DNA of 63,202 nt, the filler included, from Octopus bimaculoides (Eukaryota): assembly GCF_001194135.2 (NCBI RefSeq). It is 7 parts of 7 records of this genome, joined end to end, with 100 filler letters (N's around TTAATTAATTAA, not from the genome) between each part and the next. Parts side by side here need not be neighbours in the genome. Positions count along the whole stretch, not along the records: positions 46,725 to 58,720 come from NW_026380199.1; 6 more parts are not named here. One strand, given 5' to 3'. This document shows, piece after piece, positions 46,725-59,569 of this stretch (within the stretch, counting starts at the first letter, position 1; each line of letters begins with the position of its first letter). Position numbers and translations under genes: made by a program. Under the pieces are notes generated by a model. It ran no database searches. It saw only the letters and a list, made by a program, of their open reading frames with translations, and was not told the DNA's origin.

Positions 46725-46767
<43 letters not shown>

Positions 46768-47417
46768 TTATAAAAACATACTTATGAATACATATATATA
46801 TACACACACATACATATATATGTTTATATTAAAGATTTGTAGGTACCAATTTACATATTAGACACATTTTTGGGTGGGGCTGGTATGTAAACATTAAAGA
46901 TTTGCAGTTATGTGATGCTTCATTATGCAAGCAGAGGATACTATAAGGTATACTGTTTCCAAAAGTCAGTACCCCTTTCTATTGCGTCAGCGGTGCTCTT
47001 ACATTATTCTGTTAACGTTATTTCTACAGATATTGTGTAGAACTTATAGCCAGCACTGTTTTTTGTTACATTTCGTATTGAGACACGTGAGTGTGTGTTA
47101 GTAAATAGACAATGTGATCAAAGACAAAAGTGGGTAATGAATGTATATGCCATATTTTCTGGATTGTTGCCTCTTCTTCAGCACCCATCTAACTCACTAT
47201 TACCTCCAAACACATTGCTTATATAGTCACCGCATACAGTGATATTAAGTTATTGGATATACCATTTACACATTAGACGCATTCCTGGGGATGGTATGTA
47301 AACATTTAGTATATCTTATAGTATATTGTGTTTGCATAATGAAGTACCACATACCTACAAATCTTAAATGTTTAGATATCTGTAGAAATAACCATAACAA
47401 AATAATATATATATATA

Positions 47418-47451
<34 letters not shown>

Positions 47452-48300
47452 NNNNNNNNNNNNNNNNNNNNNNNNNNNNNNNNNNNNNNNNNNNNNNNNN
47501 NNNNNNNNNNNNNNNNNNNNNNNNNNNNNNNNNNNNNNNNNNNNNNNNNNNNNNNNNNNNNNNNNNNNNNNNNNNNNNNNNNNNNNNNNNNNNNNNNNNN
47601 NNNNNNNNNNNNNNNNNNNNNNNNNNNNNNNNNNNNNNNNNNNNNNNNNNNNNNNNNNNNNNNNNNNNNNNNNNNNNNNNNNNNNNNNNNNNNNNNNNNN
47701 NNNNNNNNNNNNNNNNNNNNNNNNNNNNNNNNNNNNNNNNNNNNNNNNNNNNNNNNNNNNNNNNNNNNNNNNNNNNNNNNNNNNNNNNNNNNNNNNNNNN
47801 NNNNNNNNNNNNNNNNNNNNNNNNNNNNNNNNNNNNNNNNNNNNNNNNNNNNNNNNNNNNNNNNNNNNNNNNNNNNNNNNNNNNNNNNNNNNNNNNNNNN
47901 NNNNNNNNNNNNNNNNNNNNNNNNNNNNNNNNNNNNNNNNNNNNNNNNNNNNNNNNNNNNNNNNNNNNNNNNNNNNNNNNNNNNNNNNNNNNNNNNNNNN
48001 NNNNNNNNNNNNNNNNNNNNNNNNNNNNNNNNNNNNNNNNNNNNNNNNNNNNNNNNNNNNNNNNNNNNNNNNNNNNNNNNNNNNNNNNNNNNNGTAGATA
48101 TATATATGTATTGTCATTAGAGTTTATAAGATGAAAGTATATAGGGAATTTTTCACAAGGAATGTTAGCATCTCACTTGAGGATTGAAACTGGCTCACTG
48201 TCTTTATTCAATGAGGTCTTACAGCCATTTTTACAGCGCACGCATGCACCCCCACCCCCGCACGTACAGATCTATATATATACATTCTTGTATGAAATGT

Positions 48301-48306
48301 TTTATT
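48301..48306 (-). promoter_or_regulatory. Candidate AATAAA polyadenylation signal for the GPCR-like gene (second candidate at 48203-48208)
   Basis: tttatt on plus strand, ~135 and ~230 nt downstream of the stop; a common hexamer in AT-rich DNA. Confidence 0.25.
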
Positions 48307-48439
48307 CATATTTCCAGTATGGGATGTGGACATAGTATATTTCATACATAAATTAATATTTAAATGTTGACATTTCTGAGATTCCATGATGGAGCTGCAT
48401 GGAGAAACCAACCACATTACAAGATCTTTGTAGAATATT

Positions 48440-50083
48440 CTAGAGTTGACTGATTCTGCTGTCTGATGGTACTACTGAAGGTAACATTGACTGAGTTTCT
48501 TTCAGAGCAGTGTCTTTGTCAGCTCCGAGGCAGCACTGGCTGAGCATAGTACGAAAGGCTTTGTAAACTGCGGCATCTGTGAAAATAACTGTGAGGGGGA
48601 AGATAACTGTTGAGAGACCAGACAGAGCTGTGGTACAGATGAGGCTGTTGATGTAAGAATCCACAGAGATGAGACTACGAATGGCCTCCGTTAGATAAAC
48701 TGGCATTATAGAAACAAGGAAGCTGATGAGCAAGATGACACAGATCTTGTAACACTGGGTCATGCTTACGTTGTGGATCTCCTTGCTGATTGATGGGTGC
48801 GATTCTTCCTCCACCACCGATTCAACCGTGATTCGTGGTGGTACAGAAGACTTTTTGCCAATTGACTTAAATGATGTTGATGCTTCCTCGATGCTGGACG
48901 GTGTCCGAACACTTGGCGGTTGAAATGGATTTGGAGGCAGATCTTCAGCAGATTTGAATGATGATATACTGCTATGGCTTTTCGGATCTTCCAATTGGGC
49001 CTGCAATGCTGCAATATCTACCGAAAACTTCCGGACATATTGATATCCTTGTGCTTGGGTCTGGTGGTCTGTGTAGCCATTGTCACCAATTTCTCCAAAT
49101 TGGCAGATTGTGTGCCGCCTTCGACCGAACATTTGCAGGAATGCTCCTGAATTAAAGCTGAAGCTATTTTTCTTATGTGTTGGTGGCTCAACTTGTGTCA
49201 CACCCGATGGATTATTGCTTACAAGTAACTGGTTTGGGGGGTGGGAATTCTTTCGCAATGGTTTTGATTTCAGCTCTTTGTACTCACCACCAGAATCACT
49301 TGGAGTCAACGTAGGTAGGGTTATGGAGTGTTCGGATGTGGAAGCTACAGAGTTTGCTCTGGGTTTTTCTATTGTCTTCTGTTTGAGTTTTACTGCCAGA
49401 AACAGAAGGCATTTAATGAACAATAAGCCAATTAATATGGTAAGCACCAGGACCTTCATAAGGTAAGACTTACTATTGAAGATGTGATAAAATGATTGAC
49501 TATCTGCAGATAGTTCATATGAATATGATAGCACACCATACAAAACACCAATAGCAAATCCTATGCTTATAACCAATGGTAGCCCAATATAAACTAAGAA
49601 CTTTCGACAGGCTTTTGAGCAACCATATTGACTCAGTAAGAACCAAAGAGCTATCAAAAACAACAGTCCGGCCTTGGTTGCAATTAAGAGTAGATATAAT
49701 GAATGTGTTGTCTCCTTCATAGACAGGAACAATGTGTTACCATTATGATACATCAGTAGACAAATGATCTCCAATGGTGACCATATCACATTGAAAATGA
49801 TGGCAATTATGAGGAGTGTAGTTAGTAGAATGTAGTAGTGATCCTTTATCAGACGGCCAATGGCCAGTGTTGTAATTACAACACTACTGCTGAGGAATCC
49901 AACCACCGCTGTGAAAGCCAAAGCAAACATCGAGACAATTAAAGAATGTGCCCGAAATACCTGTGCTGCTCTTTCACCGTTTTCTCCCATGCTGTCATTA
50001 AATGTAGAAAGTATGGTGACTGTAAGTATTTCTGGGAGACTGCCATTGCTTGGCACAGATTCCGATTCCTCGTTCATGTTCAT
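48440..50083 (-). CDS. Divergent 7-transmembrane class A (rhodopsin-like) GPCR-like orphan receptor, 547 aa, single coding exon
   Basis: Only long complex ORF. Hydrophobic helices at ~aa 48-75, 83-110, 128-150, 162-185, 207-231, 444-466 and 478-501; N-glycosylation sequons N13 and N29; G..S..V in TM1 (GN-like), F....P in TM6, P in TM7, helix-8-like YKAFRTML then CC; first Met among M1/M3 uncertain. Confidence 0.85.
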   Translation of the reverse strand: MNMNEESESVPSNGSLPEILTVTILSTFNDSMGENGERAAQVFRAHSLIVSMFALAFTAVVGFLSSSVVITTLAIGRLIKDHYYILLTTLLIIAIIFNVIWSPLEIICLLMYHNGNTLFLSMKETTHSLYLLLIATKAGLLFLIALWFLLSQYGCSKACRKFLVYIGLPLVISIGFAIGVLYGVLSYSYELSADSQSFYHIFNSKSYLMKVLVLTILIGLLFIKCLLFLAVKLKQKTIEKPRANSVASTSEHSITLPTLTPSDSGGEYKELKSKPLRKNSHPPNQLLVSNNPSGVTQVEPPTHKKNSFSFNSGAFLQMFGRRRHTICQFGEIGDNGYTDHQTQAQGYQYVRKFSVDIAALQAQLEDPKSHSSISSFKSAEDLPPNPFQPPSVRTPSSIEEASTSFKSIGKKSSVPPRITVESVVEEESHPSISKEIHNVSMTQCYKICVILLISFLVSIMPVYLTEAIRSLISVDSYINSLICTTALSGLSTVIFPLTVIFTDAAVYKAFRTMLSQCCLGADKDTALKETQSMLPSVVPSDSRISQL

Positions 50084-50749
50084 TGTTCTTATATTATCGT
50101 GTTTCTAGAAATGCAGATAGTGATACATCTATTTTCCTTTTTTTTAATTTTTTATTGCAAATATGTATATAATATCATGTGTTTATTTCTCTCTCTCTTG
50201 AGATATATATATATAGATATAGATATACTTATATATACATATATTGATGAATATGTATAGATTTTTCTGTACACACTGTATAGGAATATGAATGTATATG
50301 TAAGCAAACAGATTCACATTTCTCTGTATCTGACCATCTTCAGATATTTCAGAAATATTTCAGAGTAGGTCTTGTGTAGTTATTGGCAGTTACAATTTCC
50401 ATTTCGTCCAAAATTTTCCATTAAAATTATTTTGTTTTCTTTATATTTATTATCTTAATCATTTTGTTGAAATGTAGCATTCTGGGAAAAACTTAATGTT
50501 GTTTGTTGATTGGTTGATAAGATTCTGGGGAGGAGAGTGGGATGTTATCTATGAGTTTGTGTCACTTGTCTTCCTTTTTTTTTTTTACTCAAATATATTT
50601 CTCAGATTTTTGGGTTATTTTTTGTGTCCTACTGTTTTACAATCAAATATTTATTCTGTCATTGGTTATTGATGATGAATTATATACATATATATTGTTG
50701 TATTTCCATCTCTTTATCCAATTTCTTCTTTCTTTTCATTGCAAATTTT

Positions 50750-50793
<44 letters not shown>

Positions 50794-51375
50794 AAGGATA
50801 AAAAAGTGTATATCCTTGATTAATCTTGGCTGTTGTTTTCAGAGAAGTCCCGAGTTTAATTGAGTTCAGTGTTGTCAGAAATCTGAAAATAACAATATTA
50901 GAATAACGATAAAAATACATGAGTAAATAATAATAATAATAATAATAATAATTATAATAAAACAACAATAATATGACAATGAAATACAACATTATTGTCA
51001 AATAAAATGAAAGACACATTTGATAATGCATTCTTCACTACACTATGACTGAAAATAGAAGGCACAGTGTATCTGAATGCTTAACAAGTTTGCTTTGCCT
51101 CCATTACACTTCAGGTTTTCTCCATTGCCTGGCATCTTGAACAAAATGTTTGTTTTCTATAACCCCAAATCAACCCAAACTTTCTAAGTGAAATTGGGAA
51201 AATGGCAGAAGTCTTTCCAGTGGATTGTACCATAAGTTTAAAGGTCTAACCTTGTCATATACTGTGTCACACTGATTTTGCTTGGGTATTAAGTTACAGC
51301 TTCACATATCAGTGGAATACTCAACCACTTACATGTTAATTCAGGGGCAGATAATTCTGTTTATTAAAATTATTA

Positions 51376-51585
51376 TTGTTAGCATGCTGGACAAAATGCT
51401 AAGTGACATTTTATCCAACTTTATGTTCTGAGTTCAAATTCCGCCTAGGTCAACATCGTCTTTTATTCCTTTTGGGGGTTGATAAACTAAGTACCAGTGA
51501 AGCATTGGTGTTGATTGACTAGTCCTCTCTCTACAAAATTCAGGCCATGCGCCTATAATAGAAAGGATTATTATTATTATTATTA
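51376..51585 (+). mobile_element. SINE family A, strongly CpG-depleted
   Basis: gagttcaaattcc B-box and (ATT) tail; most CpGs of the 26999 copy read TG/CA here. Confidence 0.8.
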
Positions 51586-51835
51586 TTTTATGTTTGACTT
51601 TTGTTTTGCATTTGTACAAGTTGGATCCAAGTCTCACCCAGAGACCTCAAGAGACAACAAGTTAGAAGTTCATGTAGGTGTTATGCCTAGGGTACCATAT
51701 ATTTGGATTTGTATATAGTGTTGTTCTAGAGAATGTTTAAGAAACCATAAGAAAATTATGTGTTTGTTTTAAAATTTGAGATCACATAGACAGTATTTTA
51801 CGTAGGACATGGGCAGTTCCCATGAGCACTATCTT
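51585..51835 (-). mobile_element. R4/Dong-like LINE 3' end
   Basis: Minus strand VLMGTAHVLRKILSM* followed by 3' UTR ending at an AAT-rich tail. Confidence 0.7.
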
Positions 51836-51847
51836 TTGAACTTCAGC

Positions 51848-51881
<34 letters not shown>

Positions 51882-52104
51882 TATTATTATTATTATTATT
51901 GTTATTATTATCACCATCATTGTCACTGTCATCAACATCGTTTCCTTTTACTAATCATGACTCAACAACCACAACAATGACAACAGCAACAACTTACAAA
52001 AGGAACAAACAGTTTTTCTGTTTGAAATATTTACATACTTGAGGAGTTAGCGGAAGACAAGAGACTGGTTTGAATTATTTGAAGCTACAGCCCGTCTCCA
52101 TTCA

Positions 52105-52759
52105 TAGTCAGCAGTTTCACCACCACCACCGTCACTACCACCATCATCATCACTACCACAATCGCCACCACCATCATCACCATCGTTATCATCACTACCA
52201 TTGCCTTCATCCCCAGCATCACCTATTCAATTGCTGCTCACAGTCATCATTATCATCATCATCATCATCACTACCACTGTCAGCACCACCAGTGTTGCCT
52301 TCATCCTGAATACCATCATCAACAATCATTATCATCATCATCATCAACAATCATTATCATTATCATCATCAACAATCATTATCATTATCATCATCATCAT
52401 CATCAACAATCATTATCATCATCATCATTGTTATTATTCACCATCATCACTATTATCATTATCATTCATTGTTGTCATCATCACCACCACCACCATCACC
52501 GCTACTATGATCACCTACTACATCACTATTACCACCACCACCACTACCACCACAACGACAACCATGTTACCACAATCACTATCATCACCAACCTCACCAC
52601 TACAGTTGCTGCTACAATTACCCCCCCCCCCTCCTGCCTCTCCCTTCTCATCTTCCCTGGTATTCTTGCCACTGCCACTATCACCTTCACCACAACTACC
52701 TGTAGAGCTGCCACACCCACAACCACTGCTGCCAAAGCCACCGCTCCTAACCTCACCAC
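52105..52759. repeat. Degenerate (CAT/CAC)n trinucleotide tract with internal atcatcaacaatcatt duplications
   Basis: Direct reading. Confidence 0.85.
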
Positions 52760-53286
52760 CGCCACTACCACTATCATTCNNNNNNNNNNNNNNNNNNNNN
52801 NNNNNNNNNNNNNNNNNNNNNNNNNNNNNNNNNNNNNNNNNNNNNNNNNNNNNNNNNNNNNNNNNNNNNNNNNNNNNNNNNNNNNNNNNNNNNNNNNNNN
52901 NNNNNNNNNNNNNNNNNNNNNNNNNNNNNNNNNNNNNNNNNNNNNNNNNNNNNNTTTGTAATATGTGGACATGAATAGAATCATGAATGTGTGTATATCT
53001 GTGTTTGTAGCGTTGCATGTGCATGTATATGCAAACGAAGTTGTGTGTAAATGTGTGTGTGTGTGTGTGTGTGTGTGTATTTATGTGTGTATGCAAGTGA
53101 AGTTGTGCATAGATATACTTCCACATATATATGTGTGTGTGTGTGTTGTATGTTGAAATATTACATCATATCAAGACTGCAAGCGAAAAAAAAAAAAATA
53201 GGAACAGATTACATTGAAAAGATTTCAATATTTGAGTAACTGACATTGGTATTGGACATTTTGTAGTCCACATTTTATGTTGAAAC

Positions 53287-53590
53287 ATCATCATCATCAT
53301 TTAGCATCTGTTGTCCATGCTGGCATAGGTTGGATGGTTTGGCCAGGGCTGGTAAGCTGAGGGGCTGCACTGGACTCCAAGTGTGATTTGGCATGGTTTC
53401 TACAGCTGGATGCCCTTCCTAACACCAACCACTCTGAGAGTGTAATGAGTGCTTTTTTATGTGCCACTGGCATGGGTACCATTTGCATGACACCAATATC
53501 TACCACAACTATAATTTCACTTGGCTTGATGGGTCATCTTCTCAAACACAGCATATTGCCAAGGGTCTCGGTCATTTGTCATTGCCTCCA
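53287..53590 (-). mobile_element. Retroposon family D (SINE-like, (GAT)n tail)
   Basis: ctacagctggatgcccttcctaacaccaaccactctgagagtgt matches the reverse of 54577-54834. Confidence 0.75.
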
Positions 53591-53626
53591 TTGAATATCT
53601 TTGTATATATGTATGTTTATGAATGA

Positions 53627-53949
53627 TTCCCAGACCGGGTGTTGTGAGTGTTTATTGAGCGAAAACACCTCAGGCTCCACAAGGCTCCGGCAGGGGATGG
53701 TGGCGAACCCTGCTGTACTCTTTCACCACAGTTTCTCTCACTCTTACTTCCTGTTTCTGTTGTGCTTGTAATTCAAAGGGTCAGCCTTGTCACACTGTGT
53801 CACGCTGAATATCCCCGAGAACTACGTTAAGGGTACACATGTCTGTGGAATGCTCAGCCACTTGCATGTTAATTTCACGAGCAGGCTGTTCCGCTGATCG
53901 GATTAACTGGAACCCTCGACGTCGTAAGCGACGGAGTGCCAACAACAAC
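53627..53949 (+). mobile_element. SINE family C, 5'-truncated, with 14-bp TSD ATGTTTATGAATGA
   Basis: TSD at 53613-53626 and 53950-53963; (CAA)n tail. Confidence 0.92.
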
Positions 53950-54576
53950 ATGTTTATGAATGACACTGACTGTATAACAGCTACAATCATTTACTACTAT
54001 GTCAAGGTAAGAAGAGAGAGAGAGAGAGATGCACCCGCCCTTTCCTAGCCTTCCAATAGTTCTGCCAGTCCCTGGATTTGTACTCTTTTTTCATGAACCC
54101 TGAAGAGAAGAAAGGAAAAGTTGATGTTGGCAGGATTTGAACTCAGGACATAGATATTGCTACGTGTTCTATCCAGTGTGCTAACGACTCTGTTAGTTCA
54201 TCAGCCTGGAGTTGGATTAACAACAGAACACTAGCGGCTTATCTATAGGCACTGTGGAACTATAGCACCCTCTATTTCCACTCGATATTATCAATAACAT
54301 TCAATATAATGGGTCCTTTTTTCTTTAATTCTTTGTTTATACTTGTACATTATATAATCCTTAAGCTTAATGTCAGTAGTCATCCCGTGTCTATGAAAAA
54401 AATACAAAAATCCTTGTATAAAACTGTGTCCTTCACAGTTCCAGCGACACGGTGTTGTGCACATGCTCACATGTTTGAGATAGGAAGTTTCACGCTATGG
54501 AGAGAGAGCCCTATGTGAATGACAGTGCTGACTTTTGTGTTCTAGTGAAAGGTAGTGTGTTTCTTTTTGATTCCAA

Positions 54577-54834
54577 GTGTGTTCTGGTGGCACATAAAAT
54601 ACACCATTTTGAGCGTGGCCGTTGCCAGTACCGCCTGACTGGCTTTCATGCCGGTGGCACGTAAAAGCACCCACTACACTCTCTGAGTGGTTGGCGTTGG
54701 GAAGGGCATCCAGCTGTAGAAACTCTGCCAAATCAGATTGGAGCCTGGTGTAGCCATCTGGTTTCACCAGTCCTCAGTCAAATCGTCCAACCCATGCTAG
54801 CATGGAAAGCGGACGTTAAACGACGATGATGATG
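54577..54834 (+). mobile_element. Retroposon family D
   Basis: ggtggcacgtaaaagcaccc...gggaagggcatccagctgtagaaac...ggacgttaaacgacgatgatgat. Confidence 0.8.
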
Positions 54835-55444
54835 TGTTATGCTTAAAAATATGTTTATATTCTTGAATGTGATAAAGTTTNNNNNNNNNNNNNNNNNNNN
54901 NNNNNNNNNNNNNNNNNNNNNNNNNNNNNNNNNNNNNNNNNNNNNNNNNNNNNNNNNNNNNNNNNNNNNNNNNNNNNNNNNNNNNNNNNNNNNNNNNNNN
55001 NNNNNNNNNNNNNNNNNNNNNNNNNNNNNNNNNNNNNNNNNNNNNNNNNNNNNNNNNNNNNNNNNNNNNNNNNNNNNNNNNNNNNNNNNNNNNNNNNNNN
55101 NNNNNNNNNNNNNNNNNNNNNNNNNNNNNNNNNNNNNNNNNNNNNNNNNNNNNNNNNNNNNNNNNNNNNNNNNNNNNNNNNNNNNNNNNNNNNNNNNNNN
55201 NNNNNNNNNNNNNNNNNNNNNNNNNNNNNNNNNNNNNNNNNNNNNNNNNNNNNNNNNNNNNNNNNNNNNNNNNNNNNNNNNNNNNNNNNNNNNNNNNNNN
55301 NNNNNNNNNNNNNNNNNNNNNNNNNNNNNNNNNNNNNNNNNNNNNNNNNNNNNNNNNNNNNNNNNNNNNNNNNNNNNNNNNNNNNNNNNNNNNNNNNNNN
55401 NNNNNNNNNNNNNNNNNNNNNNNNNNNNNNNNNNNNNNNNNNNN

Positions 55445-55774
55445 ATCAACGGAACAGCCTGCTCGTGAAATTAACGTGCAAGTGGCTGAGCACTCCACAG
55501 ACATGTGTACCCTTAATGCAGTTCTCGGGGATATTCAGCGTGACGCAGTGTGACAAGGCTGACCCTTTGAATTACAGGCACAACAGAAACAGGAAGTAAG
55601 AGAAAATTGTGGTGAAAGAGTACAGCAGGGTTTGCCACCACCCTCCGCCGGAGCCTCGTGGAGCTTTAGTTGTTTTCGCTCAATAAACACTCACAACGCC
55701 CGGTGTGGGAATTGAAACCGTGATCCTATGACTGCGAGTCCACTGCCTTAACCACTGGGCCATTGCGCCTCCAC
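55445..55774 (-). mobile_element. SINE family C (3' end in gap)
   Basis: tRNA-like head gtggaggcgcaatggcccagtggttaagg on the minus strand; collinear with 57370-57756. Confidence 0.9.
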
Positions 55775-57369
55775 TAGTTTCTGATGTATACTTACTTAAA
55801 ATGAACACACCAGCATAGAGGACAGGACTGAAAGAAACAAGGCTGGATCTAAACTTGCAAAGGTAGTTGGGCTCTAGCCATGAAATGTGGTAGTATAGAC
55901 CAAACCAACGCAAATGATGGGAATGAAATAATAAACATGATTGGGCCTAGTCTAAAAAGTGGTTATGGGCCTAAATTAGCAATGATAGTTGTGCTGAAAC
56001 CAGAAAACTAAGCAAAGTAGGTTAGGATCACACCAGCAAAGGTGATACTGTAAACGACACCCACAAAGTTGATGGAATCAAAATACTAAACATTGATGCA
56101 CATGTTTGTGGGCCCCAAACAGTAAGGATGGTAAGAACAACAGTCAAGGTTTGTAAATACCAAACTACAATCTAGTAAAAGGTAATTGGGCAACTACCTC
56201 AAATGTAGTTTAGATGGCTGTCCTTCAGTTATTGGGTCAGATGAGAATATGCTTCTGTGACCCTATTTCAGTTTTGGCTCTTTACAAGCCACCAACAGCA
56301 TTAGCAGTATGAAGACATCCATTCAGAGACTCTCAGACCCCACTGCACTTTGCTCAGTCTCTTTTGTCAGGAAATTAAAACTAAACCATTGCTGTAATTT
56401 GCTTTAACTCGCTCTACCTTGCCAGCCATCTCCATCGCTTTCTATATCCCTTGCAATCTCTCAAAACTAATCAGCTGTCTCTGCTTCTGTTTCTCTCTGC
56501 AGTTAGCTATGTCTGACTGTCTATCTTCTCCCCCGCTCTCTCTCTCACTCAATCAATCTATCTATGTTGGTCTGTCTCTCTCTGTCTGTCCAGCTCACCA
56601 TATTTAACTGTTTTATCTATTTGTTTGTCTCTCCTTCTTTAGCTATCTATCTCCGTCTCTCTCTCTCTTTCTCTCTCTCTGATTGTATGTATGATTCTCT
56701 AGCTACTTACCACTCTCTCTTCACAACTTCTTTCACCTCTTTCTCCCCTACTTCGTTTTAATTTCCTCCTCATCTTCTTTATAGACTTCATCTCTCCCCA
56801 TCACCAATCAATTTCTCTCCCCCTCTTTCCTTGACTCTACTGCCACCCTTTTCTCAAGCTGTGCGTCTGTCCACTCATTAATTAAAGAGTCAGTTCATTT
56901 GCTCACTTCTCCTGGATTAGGATTTCCTCCTTTCATTATTTCAGTTTTCTAATTATTCCTTTTAGGTCTGCCATGTCTGTCTGCCCATCCATCTGTCTGC
57001 CCATCTATCACTTTCTCTTCTCATTATTGTTCATTTTGTCTTCTCTCTCCTCCAGTCACCTCCTTCCCCCAATCATCTCCCTCTTCCACTTATCTTTCTC
57101 CTCCAGTCATCTCCTCCTCTGGTCATTTTTCTTCTCCAGCTTTTTCAACTCCAGAAAGATGAAAGACAGAGTTGACCACTCTAAGATTTGAACTCAGAAC
57201 ATAAAGAGCTAAAACAAATATTGCAAATCATTGTTTATTCCAACAATCTAACAAGTGTGTCAGTTTATTACCTTTATAAAAAAAATGAGAATTATAAAAA
57301 AAAAAAATGATTTCTTATATTTGTCACTGGAGTATAATTGGTATTTCTACTATTGACATAAGAACAATA

Positions 57370-57756
57370 TGTTGTTGTTGGCACTCCGTCGCTTACGACG
57401 TCGAGGGTTCCAGTTGATCCAATCAACGGAACAGCCTGCTCTTGAAATTAACGTGCAAGTGGCTGAGCACTCCACAGACATGTGTACCTTTAACGTAGTT
57501 CTCGGGGATATTCAGCATGACACAGTGTGACAAGGCTGGCCCTTTCAATTACAGGCACAACAGAAACAGGAAGTAAGAGCGAGAGAAAGTTGTGGTGAAA
57601 GAGTACAGCAGGGTTCGCCACCATCCCCTGCCGGAGCCTCGTGGAGCTTTAGGTGTTTTTGCTCAATAAACACTCACAACGCCCGGTCTGGGAATCGAAA
57701 CCGCAATCCTATGACCGCAAGTCCGCTGCCCTAACCACTGGGCCATTGCGCCTCCA
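57370..57756 (-). mobile_element. SINE family C, full length, 13-bp TSD CATAAG(A/G)ACAATA
   Basis: A-box TGGCCCAGTGG, B-box GGTTTCGATTCCC; TSD at 57357-57369 and 57757-57769. Confidence 0.92.
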
Positions 57757-57770
57757 CATAAGGACAATAA

Positions 57771-58380
57771 ATGAGGTGGGATACTACAGGGAGGAGAGGT
57801 TAACAGAGATTGTATGTTCCAACATCACTACACTTTACATGTCTGATGAAATGAGGTATATTACAGAGAAGAGAGGGTAACAAAGACTGTTTTAATATTA
57901 CCACATTTCACACTGTCTGATGAAATGGGGGACATTGTAGAGAGGAGAAGTTATATGTTTTAATATTGCTACATGTCAGATGTCTGAAGTGGGATGTACG
58001 TTATAGACAGGAAAGTTTAATAAAGAATATGTCTTGATATTAACCACATTTCACACTGTCTGATGAAACGGGGGACTTTATAGAGAAGAGAGGTTAATAA
58101 AAACTGTATGCTTTAATATTGTTACACATGAGATGTCTGTGAAGTGGGGGGTATATTACAGAGAGGAGATGTTAATAAAGGACATATGTCTTGATATTAC
58201 TACATTTCACATGTCTTGTGAAGTGGGGGACATTATAGGGAGGAGAGGTTAATAAAGATTATGTGTTTTAATATGACCACACTTTATGTCTAATGAAGTG
58301 TGGCGGGGGGGATATTACAGGAAGGAGAGTTTAATAAGGATTATATGTTTTAATATTGCCGCACTTCACATGTCTGATGC
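57771..58380. repeat. Diverged minisatellite, 8 units of ~64-83 bp
   Basis: Unit pattern gtggggg.tattacagagaggagaggttaataaag..tatgttttaatatt.c.aca.ttcacatgtctgatgaa. Confidence 0.85.
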
Positions 58381-59569
58381 TACAGGTTCGGTAGTAATTC
58401 AACTGCACCAAATGATTTGCCATTCATACTGACATTAAGAAATATATAGGAAACTAAATTCTTATGCATACACACACAATGCACACATATACATTCACAT
58501 TCATTCATACATACATGTATTCACACAAACATCTACATCCATGCATATCCACACACATACAGATATACATTCTCACATACACATGCATATATTTATTTAC
58601 ACATACATACACATGCACTCACACACACACATCAACATAAACATGCATGCACATATACATTCATAGATCTGTGCACACGCACACATACACACACACACAC
58701 ACACATGCATCTATACACACNNNNNNNNNNNNNNNNNNNNNNNNNNNNNNNNNNNNNNNNNNNNTTAATTAATTAANNNNNNNNNNNNNNNNNNNNNNNN
58801 NNNNNNNNNNNNNNNNNNNNTTTTTCTATGCACACACAAGGAGACAGTGGTACATACATACATATACACACATGCACACACATACATAAAAAACACACAC
58901 ACACACACAGACATACATACACACATGCACACACACATGCATACATACATACACACCCATGCACACATGAGACACACGCATGCACAAAAACAAAAAAAAA
59001 GCAAAAACAGAACGCAACGTGAATAACGGACAGAATCAAGACTATTGAAAAGGTTGCAAGACGCAACGAAAATTTTAGGAAAATAAAAATAATAAGTGGA
59101 AATTTTAACGGTGCGTNNNNNNNNNNAGGTTGCAAGACGCAACGAAAATTTTAGGAAAATAAAAATAATAAGTGGAAATTTTAACGGTGCGTGTGTTAAA
59201 TTTTAAGGCACGATAAGAAAATGACTCTCCCCAGACACAACGGAAATAAATGAATTAATGGAAAATTAAATTTAACGAGATAAATTCTGCTGATCACTAA
59301 AAATTGAATAACAAACTTTGCAAAAAGTGAATTTTTACCGGCCACCAACTTGGTAGCCAGGTTGTGAATAAATGTAACTTATTTTAACCATCATACTTTA
59401 AAACTTAAGGTTTTGCAGATTTATGCAGTCCCAGATACCGTGATTATTTGAGAAATATTAATCAAGGATTTGCATTCCCTCCCTAAGATCCCATGTTCAG
59501 CCATACTTTGCTACATACGGTTCGGCATGTATCATGTATGTATGTATGTATGTATGTATGTATGTATGT

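What the first reader, a model, noticed from the sequence alone, without database searches (positions are those of the whole stretch)
48440..50083. Intact orphan 7-TM receptor that has lost every canonical class A activation motif
Seen: a stop-free 547-aa ORF in a window where all other coding sequence is decayed, with seven hydrophobic segments spaced as in class A GPCRs. The end of TM3 reads IALWFLL where D/E-R-Y is expected; TM2 has no LAxAD aspartate (TLLIIAI); there is no Cys at the top of TM3 or in ECL2; TM6 reads FLVSIMP instead of CWxP; TM7 reads FPLTV instead of NPxxY. Established: these motifs form the ionic lock, sodium site, disulfide and Tyr toggle, and receptors lacking DRY can be G-protein-uncoupled or arrestin-biased. 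Inference: this is a maintained, atypical (decoy, scaffold, constitutive or sensory) receptor, possibly an undescribed lineage-specific family.
Basis: partly seen in the sequence, partly recalled or inferred. Interest (0 to 1): 0.75.

Follow-up and report, generated by a model that had tools for sequence, protein, structure and literature searches.

The report
Divergent octopus orphan GPCR, conserved loop
This is an intact, selectively maintained octopus gene for a very divergent rhodopsin-type receptor that has lost nearly all the usual activation motifs; it belongs to an apparently undescribed mollusc-and-annelid family whose best-conserved part is a phosphorylation-site-rich block in the long intracellular loop, not the membrane core.

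Summary
Window 48440-50083 (minus strand) is a 547-aa single-exon ORF with seven hydrophobic segments, far longer than chance allows. It is 97% identical to O. vulgaris, 72% to Argonauta, and dN/dS is 0.12-0.16. Alone it matches no Pfam or PDB entry. Family profiles match class A GPCRs (E=7e-19), two relatives pass Pfam 7tm_1, and an AlphaFold model (TM pLDDT 90-98) finds only class A receptors.

Hallmark positions read S1.50, A2.50, W-F-L for DRY, I6.48 and F-P-x-x-V for NPxxY. TM4 has no Trp, TM5 has no Pro, and the conserved disulfide is absent. Only L2.46, F6.44, P6.50 and P7.50 survive.

The gene is not cephalopod-specific. Named homologues are all molluscs or annelids. Annelid-type members still keep N1.50, D/N2.50, both Cys and Q-R-L, so the loss was stepwise.

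It is near-invariant across both phyla and more conserved than the helices. Molluscs also end in S/T-x-V/L (18/18).

My best reading is a ligand-sensing 7TM protein that signals through this loop and the tail rather than through canonical G-protein switches. That mechanism is inferred and not tested.

The parts
48440..50083 (-). Complete single-exon CDS (547 aa plus stop codon at 48440-48442) of a divergent class A-type orphan 7TM receptor. The exact protein is on record for O. bimaculoides assembly GCA_001194135.2, contig LGKD02085329.1.
   Evidence: chance test; dN/dS 0.12-0.16
49952..50083 (-). N-terminal extracellular segment (residues 1-44) with sequons N13-G-S and N29-D-S. It is the fastest-evolving part of the protein (omega 0.77 against Argonauta).
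49379..49951 (-). TM1-TM5 (residues 45-235). Hallmark positions: S66 (1.50), L90 (2.46), A94 (2.50), N98 (2.54), W101-x-P103-x-E105 at the outer end of TM2, W147-F148-L149 in place of DRY. TM4 has no Trp, TM5 has no Pro, and there is no Cys at 3.25 or in ECL2.
48767..49378 (-). Third intracellular loop (residues 236-439, about 204 aa), predicted mostly disordered.
48944..49168 (-). Hyper-conserved ICL3 core module (residues 306-380), the most conserved region of the protein. Entropy-based conservation is 0.79 against 0.57-0.66 for the TM thirds. Against Argonauta it has 7 nonsynonymous and 41 synonymous differences.
49106..49126 (-). G320-R-R-R-H-T325-I: invariant basophilic (R-R-x-T) phospho-acceptor-type site. 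R322, R323, H324 and T325 are invariant in all 50 aligned family members.
48980..49045 (-). Y347-Q-Y-V-R-K-F-S354-V-D-I-A-A-L-Q-A-Q-L-E-D-P-K368: a second invariant basophilic site (R-K-x-S) followed by a short helix. It is 17/22 identical to the annelid Owenia, against about 18% identity for the whole protein.
48524..48766 (-). TM6, TM7 and helix 8 (residues 440-520). Key positions: F455 (6.44), S458, I459 (6.48), P461 (6.50), T465-E466 at the outer end of TM6, Y477-x-N479 at the outer end of TM7, F495-P496-L-T-V499 in place of NPxxY, D503, and C517-C518 (possible palmitoylation sites).
48443..48454 (-). C-terminal I-S-Q-L-COOH, a class I PDZ-ligand-type ending (S/T-x-V/L). It is present in 18/18 molluscan members and 3/32 non-molluscan members.
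48203..48306 (-). Two AATAAA hexamers, 133 and 231 nt downstream of the stop codon (48301-48306 and 48203-48208). These are candidate polyadenylation signals.
   Evidence: sequence match only

Best explanation
The ORF is the functional, single-exon gene of a highly derived member of the rhodopsin-type (class A) GPCR superfamily. It belongs to an apparently undescribed family found in molluscs and annelids; no octopus paralogue was found.

Shown:
- It has a 7TM class A fold and is homologous to class A receptors.
- It is under purifying selection.
- In the octopus lineage, nearly all residues that normally carry activation from the ligand pocket to the G protein have been replaced. These are the Na+-site D2.50, the R3.50 ionic lock, the W6.48 toggle, N7.49/Y7.53, P5.50/Y5.58 and the TM3-ECL2 disulfide.
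- The loss was stepwise. The annelid-type relatives already lack W6.48, N7.49 and Y7.53. Molluscs then lost R3.50, D/N2.50 and the disulfide. Cephalopods also lost N1.50.
- Selection instead holds three things: (i) polar and charged residues at the extracellular ends of TM2, TM6 and TM7; (ii) a near-invariant disordered-loop module in ICL3 with two basophilic-kinase-type sites (RRHT325, RKFS354) about 29 residues apart plus a short helix; (iii) in molluscs, an S/T-x-V/L C-terminus.

Inferred:
- The protein still senses something at a conserved outer pocket.
- Its output is not classical G-protein activation through the TM3/5/6/7 microswitches and ICL2.
- Output instead goes through phosphorylation-regulated docking of a conserved cytoplasmic partner on the ICL3 module. 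Candidates are a 14-3-3 dimer on the two phosphosites, or a kinase, phosphatase or arrestin-like adaptor.
- PDZ scaffolds position the receptor through its tail.

Confidence by step: about 0.95 that it is a maintained divergent class A family member, about 0.6 that the ICL3 module is the main functional interface, and about 0.35 that signalling is essentially G-protein-independent.
For: Real gene:
- 547-aa ORF against a maximum of 159 aa in shuffles.
- 97%, 72% and about 52% identical full-length orthologues in O. vulgaris/O. sinensis, Argonauta and other cephalopods.
- omega 0.16 (dS 0.095) and 0.12.

Class A homology:
- The molluscan profile finds only class A GPCRs, though weakly.
- The mollusc-plus-annelid profile gives E=7e-19 to 5-HT1A, then NPY1R, GPR84, alpha1A and GPR101.
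- 4 of 21 members match 7tm_1. P0069 and P0071 exceed the 7tm_1 gathering score.
- The AlphaFold model has TM pLDDT 90-98 and pTM 0.69.
- All top-50 Foldseek hits are class A receptors, best E=5.5e-5, target TM-score up to 0.69.

Motif states and stepwise loss.

Conservation pattern:
- ICL3 core 0.79, against TM outer thirds 0.66, middle 0.59, inner 0.57, and ICL2 0.42.
- ICL3 core exceeds all TM positions at p=8e-10. Outer exceeds inner at p=0.006 in molluscs.
- Region-wise dN against Argonauta is 0.04 for the ICL3 core and 0.13-0.18 for the TM regions.
- R322, R323, H324, T325, Y347, Y349, R351, K352, S354, V355, D356, A359, L360, Q363, L364, P367 and K368 are invariant in 50 sequences.

Tail and module:
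- PDZ-type ending in 18/18 molluscs. The CVCYC motif is in 28/32 non-molluscs and 0/18 molluscs.
- The module has no counterpart in Pfam or the PDB.

Functional analogy: SREB receptors are class A orphans with altered DRY/CWxP/NPxxY, no Pro in TM5 and an exceptionally conserved long ICL3, and unconventional partners have been proposed for them (PMC10670248).
Against: - No experimental or expression data were available. Logan contigs carrying the squid orthologue could not be shown to be transcripts.
- The phosphosite, 14-3-3 and PDZ readings are consensus matches only.
- Some GPCRs with degenerate DRY/NPxxY still couple to G proteins. The annelid-type relatives keep R3.50, so the ancestral protein may have been a conventional receptor.
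- Long conserved ICL3 segments also occur in ordinary G-protein-coupled aminergic receptors.
- The outer-versus-inner conservation difference is significant only within molluscs. It is not significant across the whole family (p=0.17).
- The AlphaFold confidence for the ICL3 module is low to modest (pLDDT about 40-63), so nothing structural can be said about docking.
Confidence: 0.55

Rival explanations
1. It is a conventional ligand-activated, G-protein-coupled class A receptor (for example for an amine, peptide or lipid) that uses unusual residues at the microswitch positions. On this reading the conserved ICL3 block is simply its regulatory and desensitisation region.
For: - Clear class A homology and fold.
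- Conserved polar residues at the outer ends of TM2, TM6 and TM7, consistent with a ligand pocket.
- Relatives retain N1.50, D/N2.50, the disulfide and R3.50.
- The nearest solved matches are aminergic or peptide receptors with long ICL3.
Against: - In octopus R3.50, D2.50, W6.48, N7.49, Y7.53, P5.50 and Y5.58 are all replaced.
- ICL2 and the cytoplasmic thirds of the helices, which form the usual G-protein interface, are the least conserved parts (0.42 and 0.57). The ICL3 core scores 0.79.
Confidence: 0.3
2. It is a ligand-independent 7TM scaffold, chaperone or decoy. The bundle would be only a membrane anchor for the ICL3 module and the PDZ tail.
For: - The ICL3 core is far more conserved than the bundle.
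- The activation network and the disulfide are lost.
- The PDZ-type tail is fixed in molluscs.
Against: - The bundle is still under clear purifying selection (omega about 0.13 for TM1-5).
- Within the bundle, the extracellular ends are the best-conserved parts in molluscs, including invariant E105 and N479 and near-invariant E466 and Y477. That is hard to explain for a mere anchor.
Confidence: 0.12
3. It is a lineage-specific chemosensory receptor of cephalopods, as one of the reader's options ('sensory') suggests.
For: Lophotrochozoans have large lineage-specific class A expansions thought to be chemosensory (PMC11886862).
Against: - No octopus paralogue was found: every cephalopod hit is a full-length protein at 97%, 72% or about 52% identity, consistent with orthologues.
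- It has homologues across molluscs and annelids.
- The extracellular TM ends are conserved rather than hypervariable, the opposite of the pattern reported for those expansions.
Confidence: 0.02
4. It is a chance ORF, a decaying pseudogene, or a 7TM protein that is not a GPCR.
For: The single sequence has no Pfam or PDB hit.
Against: - The ORF is far longer than chance allows.
- Full-length orthologues are intact, with omega 0.12-0.16.
- Family profiles and the predicted fold match class A GPCRs only.
Confidence: 0.01

Closest known systems
Class A (rhodopsin-like) GPCRs, Pfam PF00001 7tm_1. Best solved matches are 5-HT1A/1B/2A, NPY1R, GPR84, alpha1A-adrenoceptor, GPR101 and adenosine A1/A2A.
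   Same: Seven-helix fold with helix 8 and an extracellular N-terminus carrying sequons. Homology is detectable through family profiles (E=7e-19). L2.46, P2.59, F6.44, P6.50 and P7.50 sit in register. A long ICL3 is shared with many aminergic receptors.
   Different: The octopus sequence alone is below detection for Pfam and the PDB. N1.50, D2.50, C3.25/ECL2-Cys, DRY, W4.50, P5.50, Y5.58, W6.48, N7.49 and Y7.53 are all replaced. There is no specific affinity to any one subfamily: E-values for amine, peptide and lipid receptors are similar.
SREB orphan receptors (GPR27/SREB1, GPR85/SREB2, GPR173/SREB3)
   Same: This is the closest match for how it may work. SREBs are class A orphans with modified DRY (TRY), CWxP and NPxxY (NPxxC) and no proline in TM5. 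Their long third intracellular loop is exceptionally conserved, which has led to proposals of unconventional partners or signalling (PMC10670248).
   Different: SREBs are studied in vertebrates and keep R3.50, W6.48 and N7.49/P7.50. They have no canonical PDZ ligand. No SREB sequence could be retrieved with these tools, so homology of the loops was not tested. From memory only, the SREB ICL3 lacks the RRHT...YxYVRKWSVD...ALQxQLENPK block. I treat the resemblance as convergent until a phylogeny says otherwise.
Atypical chemokine receptors and other DRY-altered 'decoy' or arrestin-biased GPCRs (established knowledge, not tested here)
   Same: Altered DRY region associated with loss of G-protein coupling.
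   Different: Those receptors keep most other class A microswitches and the disulfide, bind known chemokines, and have short ICL3. Here almost the whole network is gone, and the conserved element is a long-loop module.
Taxon-restricted orphan rhodopsins of flatworms (PROF1/Srfb, fwRhods)
   Same: A precedent for spiralian, phylum-restricted class A orphans with very low similarity to other receptors (PMC6114109).
   Different: Those are lineage-expanded multi-gene groups. [quoted passage not shown] This family shows no octopus paralogue, spans two phyla and lacks those motifs. No sequence relationship was tested.

Membership tests
Class A (rhodopsin-like) GPCR superfamily | Seven transmembrane helices with an extracellular N-terminus and cytoplasmic helix 8 | tested here: met
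   Seven hydropathy peaks. AlphaFold2 models seven long helices plus helix 8 with TM pLDDT 90-98. N-terminal N-x-S/T sequons.
Class A (rhodopsin-like) GPCR superfamily | Significant sequence similarity to the family (Pfam 7tm_1 or solved class A receptors) | tested here: met
   Not met by the octopus sequence alone. Met through homologues: family profile against the PDB gives E=7e-19, 4/21 members hit 7tm_1, and P0069 (39.0 bits) and P0071 (41.5 bits) exceed the 30.5-bit gathering score.
Class A (rhodopsin-like) GPCR superfamily | Fold match to solved class A structures | tested here: met
   All top-50 Foldseek PDB hits are class A GPCRs. Best E=5.5e-5, probability 1.00, target TM-score up to 0.69. 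E-values are modest because about 200 loop residues are disordered.
Class A (rhodopsin-like) GPCR superfamily | N1.50 and D2.50 (sodium site / LAxAD) | tested here: not met
   S66 and A94 in octopus. Non-molluscan members have N1.50 (24/27) and N/D at 2.50 (22/27). Molluscs carry D/N one turn up, at 2.54.
Class A (rhodopsin-like) GPCR superfamily | C3.25-ECL2 disulfide | tested here: not met
   No Cys at the top of TM3 or in ECL2 in octopus, and no ECL2 Cys in any aligned mollusc. Both Cys are present in annelid-type members.
Class A (rhodopsin-like) GPCR superfamily | E/DRY at the cytoplasmic end of TM3 | tested here: not met
   W147-F148-L149 in octopus. Bivalves have Q-N-x. Annelid-type members mostly have Q/H/Y-R-L, so R3.50 is kept there.
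Class A (rhodopsin-like) GPCR superfamily | CWxP in TM6 | tested here: not met
   S458-I459-M-P461. Only P6.50 (and F6.44) is retained. W6.48 is absent from all 35 sequences of alignment A2.
Class A (rhodopsin-like) GPCR superfamily | NPxxY in TM7 | tested here: not met
   F495-P496-L-T-V499. Only P7.50 is retained. Non-molluscs have H-P-x-x-L.
Mollusc/annelid ICL3-module family (defined here) | RRHT...YxYVRK[F/W]SVD[I/V]xALxxQLxxPK block in a 200-430-aa ICL3 of a single-ORF 7TM protein | tested here: met
   Invariant residues 322-325, 347, 349, 351-352, 354-356, 359-360, 363-364 and 367-368 in 50 sequences. 75 cluster representatives at E<=1e-10 in the exhaustive search.
SREB family (GPR27/85/173) | Orthology or sequence similarity to SREBs, with the TRY and NPxxC variants | not tested
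   No SREB sequence could be retrieved with these tools. The motif states differ: WFL and FPxxV here, against TRY and NPxxC in SREBs. I therefore claim only a functional analogy.

The most novel reading that the evidence does not exclude
A spiralian (mollusc plus annelid, possibly wider) family of class A-derived 7TM proteins has shifted its conserved function from the G-protein microswitch network to a dedicated signalling module in ICL3. That module has twin basophilic phosphosites plus a short helix and has no counterpart in Pfam or the PDB. On this reading the family is an independently evolved, SREB-like, G-protein-independent 7TM signalling or scaffolding system. The octopus protein would be its most stripped-down natural example, and molluscs have additionally rewired the tail from a Cys-rich CVCYC motif to a PDZ ligand.
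Probability: 0.3. Interest if true: 0.65.

Novelty: new variant of a known kind. Interest (0 to 1): 0.5.

Why it matters
If the loop-centred reading is right, this family is a natural experiment in what a rhodopsin-type fold does once the canonical activation network is dismantled step by step. Living intermediates exist: annelid-type, then bivalve/gastropod, then cephalopod.

It offers a compact, invariant intracellular module whose partner could be found by simple pull-downs. It also gives an invertebrate parallel to the unresolved SREB orphans.

For cephalopod genomics, it adds a conserved, probably single-copy orphan to a receptor repertoire otherwise discussed mainly in terms of lineage-specific expansions.

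If it instead proves to be a conventional receptor, it would show that G-protein coupling tolerates simultaneous loss of R3.50, D2.50, W6.48 and NPxxY.

Tried and rejected
- Single-sequence Pfam and PDB searches found nothing useful: best hits were YxzE at E=2.6 and SLAC1 at E=0.5. Profiles were needed.
- A second named-collection search with the wide alignment only re-found molluscs, because the word index is swamped.
- Most annelid-type and other distant members come from unnamed ENA/Logan/JGI assemblies. Literature searches for their accessions (GCA_022702875, GCA_022702835) found nothing, so their taxa remain unknown.
- I tried to infer expression from Logan contigs that carry the squid orthologue in 65 runs. 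The shared 5' ends are explained by an upstream poly(A) run that breaks assemblies, so no inference was made.
- I looked for arginyl-tRNA-synthetase exons in the window, because that gene hosts the Argonauta orthologue. tblastn of six-frame Argonauta fragments found only the receptor ORF and short repeats.
- Rfam and tRNA scans of the piece found nothing.
- The ICL3 module alone, searched against the PDB, gave one spurious hit: the rhamnose-binding lectin CSL3, with per-domain E of 5.8-13. Pfam gave no hit.
- The nearest non-family GPCRs from the exhaustive search (P0107, P0113) resemble NPY, angiotensin and aminergic receptors about equally, so no sister family could be named.
- My first DRY mapping was off by one column. 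It was corrected using the Q-R-L column of the non-molluscs and the 5-HT1A alignment.
Full report
**1. The observation**

The piece (46725-58720) contains one long ORF, on the minus strand at 48440..50083, encoding 547 aa from ATG to stop. An in-frame stop lies seven codons upstream of the ATG. In 300 composition-preserving shuffles of the piece the longest ATG-ORF was 159 aa (mean 91). With the ORF's own base composition, the chance of 547 stop-free codons is about 2e-14.

A 19-residue hydropathy scan gives seven peaks, at about 45-72, 84-108, 124-152, 160-185, 207-235, 440-467 and 476-500. A stretch of about 204 residues separates segments 5 and 6. The N-terminal 44 residues carry two N-x-S/T sequons.

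**2. It is a real, maintained gene**

The exact protein is on record for assembly GCA_001194135.2, contig LGKD02085329.1 (14,036 bp). A paper identifies that assembly as Octopus bimaculoides (PMC10700109).

Full-length orthologues exist:
- O. vulgaris and O. sinensis, 97% identity, 547 aa, annotated 'hypothetical' or 'uncharacterized LOC115213908'.
- Argonauta hians, 72% identity.
- Three further cephalopod proteins, 51-54% identity.

Nei-Gojobori estimates on codon alignments give:
- dN/dS = 0.16 against O. vulgaris (dS 0.095; 19 nonsynonymous and 34 synonymous differences).
- dN/dS = 0.12 against Argonauta (dS about 1.4, near saturation).

The coding sequence is a single uninterrupted ORF in octopus and Argonauta, and in the three distant-member contigs examined (L003, L005, L006). 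I could not obtain expression evidence. Contigs carrying the squid orthologue in 65 sequencing runs all break at an upstream homopolymer, so they cannot be told apart from genomic contigs.

**3. What it is**

On its own the protein matches nothing in Pfam or among solved structures. Its relatives settle the question.
- A profile of 21 molluscan homologues matches only class A GPCRs in the PDB, although weakly (best E=2.9e-4). Four of the 21 hit Pfam 7tm_1.
- An exhaustive HMM search of 1.84 billion cluster representatives found 125 proteins at E<=1e-3 and 75 at E<=1e-10.
- A profile that includes the more distant full-length members matches 5-HT1A at E=7e-19. NPY1R, GPR84, alpha1A, GPR101 and H1 follow closely.
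- Two distant members pass Pfam's own gathering score for 7tm_1.
- AlphaFold2 with a 50-sequence alignment gives a seven-helix bundle plus helix 8, with pLDDT 90-98 in the helices and pTM 0.69. The long loop is disordered (a first model with 21 sequences).
- All 50 best Foldseek matches in the PDB are class A receptors: 5-HT2A/1B/2C, adenosine, muscarinic, beta1 and orexin. The best E is 5.5e-5 and the target-normalised TM-score reaches 0.69.

The protein is therefore a class A-derived 7TM receptor. It has no specific affinity to any characterised subfamily. The nearest non-family hits resemble peptide and amine receptors about equally.

**4. Motif states and the order of loss**

The 5-HT1A alignment and the family alignments fix the Ballesteros-Weinstein register. 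The octopus residues at each hallmark position are:

| Position | Octopus residue(s) |
|---|---|
| 1.50 | S66 |
| 2.46 | L90 (kept) |
| 2.50 | A94 |
| 2.54 | N98 |
| 2.59 | P103 (kept) |
| 3.49-3.51 | W147-F148-L149 |
| TM4 | no Trp |
| TM5 | no Pro, no cytoplasmic Tyr |
| 6.44 | F455 (kept) |
| 6.47 | S458 |
| 6.48 | I459 |
| 6.50 | P461 (kept) |
| 7.49 | F495 |
| 7.50 | P496 (kept) |
| 7.53 | V499 |
| C3.25 / ECL2 Cys | neither present |

The non-molluscan members are less derived:
- 24/27 have N1.50.
- 22/27 have N or D at 2.50. Owenia reads AFAD.
- Most have a Cys at the top of TM3 and one in ECL2.
- 15/27 have R3.50, typically as Q-R-L.

All members, however, already lack W6.48, N7.49 (H instead) and Y7.53.

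The inferred order of loss is:
1. The TM6/TM7 switches were altered before the mollusc-annelid split.
2. R3.50, the 2.50 polar residue and the disulfide were lost in molluscs. The acidic or amide residue reappears at 2.54, where non-molluscs have Cys, which looks like a positional swap.
3. N1.50 is retained in some bivalves and a gastropod but is Ser in cephalopods.

The octopus protein is thus the most stripped-down end of a graded series.

**5. Distribution**

Every homologue that carries a source name is a mollusc or an annelid.
- Molluscs: Octopus (three species), Argonauta, Ylistrum, Crassostrea, Dreissena, Babylonia, Candidula, Plakobranchus.
- Annelids: Owenia fusiformis, Dimorphilus gyrociliatus, Lamellibrachia satsuma.

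Arthropod, nematode and vertebrate proteomes are abundant and named in the same collections. Their absence among the named hits suggests a lophotrochozoan-restricted family. This is an inference, because many members come from unnamed assemblies. No octopus paralogue was found: each cephalopod hit is a full-length protein consistent with one orthologue per species.

I found no description of the family or its motifs in the searchable literature.

**6.

The most conserved part of the protein is not a helix. It is a block in the third intracellular loop. In octopus it reads G320-RRRHT325-I ... Y347-Q-Y-V-R-K-F-S354-V-D-I-A-A-L-Q-A-Q-L-E-D-P-K368.

- Across 50 aligned members from both phyla, R322, R323, H324, T325, Y347, Y349, R351, K352, S354, V355, D356, A359, L360, Q363, L364, P367 and K368 are invariant.
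- The 22-residue second half is 17/22 identical between octopus and the annelid Owenia. The whole proteins are about 18% identical.
- Entropy-based conservation among molluscs is 0.79 for the loop core. It is 0.66, 0.59 and 0.57 for the outer, middle and inner thirds of the helices, and 0.42 for ICL2. The core exceeds all TM positions at p=8e-10.
- Between octopus and Argonauta the core has 7 nonsynonymous and 41 synonymous differences. Its dN is 0.04, against 0.13-0.18 in the TM regions.
- The block contains two basophilic-kinase-type consensus sites, R-R-H-T325 and R-K-F-S354, about 29 residues apart. AlphaFold predicts a short helix at 357-371 with modest confidence.
- Annelid-type members add an acidic run with F-D-x-K-M and often a third R-R-G-S site.
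- The module has no counterpart in Pfam or the PDB.

Two further patterns are worth noting:
- All 18 molluscan members end in S/T-x-V/L, a class I PDZ-ligand type ending (-SQL in cephalopods; -TQV, -TEV or -SQV in others). Only 3 of 32 non-molluscs do. Conversely, 28/32 non-molluscs and 0/18 molluscs carry a Cys-rich W-x-CVCYCNIGKG tail motif.
- Within the molluscan bundle, the best-conserved positions cluster at the extracellular ends of TM2 (W101, P103, E105), TM6 (T465, E466) and TM7 (Y477, N479). Outer exceeds inner at p=0.006. The difference is not significant across the whole family (p=0.17).

**7. How it most likely works**

Shown: a class A fold, purifying selection, loss of the canonical activation network, and the conservation pattern above.

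Inferred: conserved outer-pocket residues suggest the protein still binds something. However, the parts that normally contact and activate G proteins are gone or poorly conserved. These are R3.50, Y5.58, Y7.53, ICL2 and the inner helix ends.

I therefore favour a model with two elements. First, conformational or constitutive signalling is read out through the ICL3 module. This would be phosphorylation at T325 and S354 by a basophilic kinase, creating or gating a docking site. Two sites about 29 residues apart would suit a 14-3-3 dimer, and other adaptors are equally possible. Second, the PDZ-type tail localises the receptor in molluscs.

The described system that looks most similar in operation is the vertebrate SREB group (GPR27/85/173). 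SREBs are class A orphans with altered DRY/CWxP/NPxxY, no Pro in TM5 and an exceptionally conserved long ICL3 that motivated searches for unconventional partners (PMC10670248). I do not claim membership. The motif states differ, and no SREB sequence could be retrieved with these tools to test it.

The main rival is an ordinary G-protein-coupled receptor with unusual switch residues, to which I give about 0.3. A purely ligand-independent scaffold gets about 0.12. A chemosensory expansion member, a pseudogene or a non-GPCR are effectively excluded.

**8. Novelty and verdict**

The gene itself is already predicted in public annotations as an uncharacterised protein. UniProt flags the O. vulgaris orthologue with the family-1 GPCR profile. 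What appears new is:
- recognition of a mollusc-annelid family defined by an invariant ICL3 module;
- the graded dismantling of class A hallmarks along the lineage to cephalopods;
- the tail rewiring in molluscs.

I classify it as a new variant of a known kind and score interest at 0.5. It is a solid, testable lead and not a categorical surprise.

Noticed in passing
L002 (Argonauta hians BAAFZT010000013.1), whole 21.6-kb locus; compare window 46725-58720: In Argonauta the orthologous receptor gene lies inside, and on the strand opposite to, a gene whose product carries arginyl-tRNA synthetase domains. It is therefore probably nested in an intron. In the 12-kb window piece I found no conserved exon apart from the receptor ORF, so nesting in O. 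bimaculoides is undetermined.
   Followed up: partly
window 53625-53954, 55445-55774, 57366-57757: Three copies (88-96% identical) of an interspersed repeat of about 330 nt. One copy is inverted relative to the other two. Shorter repeat fragments at 53384-53456 and 54663-54735 also match several places in the Argonauta locus. This is probably a SINE- or MITE-like element.
   Followed up: partly
window 57952-58375: Tandem array of a 77-nt unit (5.4 copies, about 68% matches), also scored as a 155-nt unit, with related copies from 57775.
   Followed up: no
window 52100-52560: Long imperfect (CAT/CAC)n-type microsatellite block with strongly negative GC skew. It produces spurious His/Thr/Ile-rich 'ORFs' (for example 52201..52974) that are not genes.
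   Followed up: no
window 50751-50795; L008-L011 5' ends: A 45-nt homopolymer (T on the gene's strand) lies about 670 nt upstream of the receptor's ATG. The squid orthologue has an A run about 300 nt upstream that terminates all assembled contigs.
   Followed up: no
window 50105-50111 (minus strand): The sequence tttctag, ending 21 nt upstream of the ATG, looks like a 3' splice acceptor. This would fit a non-coding 5' exon. O. sinensis lists two protein accessions with the same protein sequence for the orthologue. This rests on a sequence match only.
   Followed up: no
family alignments A2/A4 (TM2 columns of octopus A94 and N98): There is an apparent positional swap in TM2. Non-molluscs have N/D at 2.50 and Cys at 2.54. 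Molluscs have Cys (Ala in octopus) at 2.50 and D/N at 2.54. This is a possible compensated relocation of the buried polar residue by one helical turn.
   Followed up: partly
window about 47450-48090, 52780-52960, 54850-55440: Runs of N (assembly gaps or masked sequence) inside the piece generate long artificial 'X' ORFs in the ORF list.
   Followed up: no
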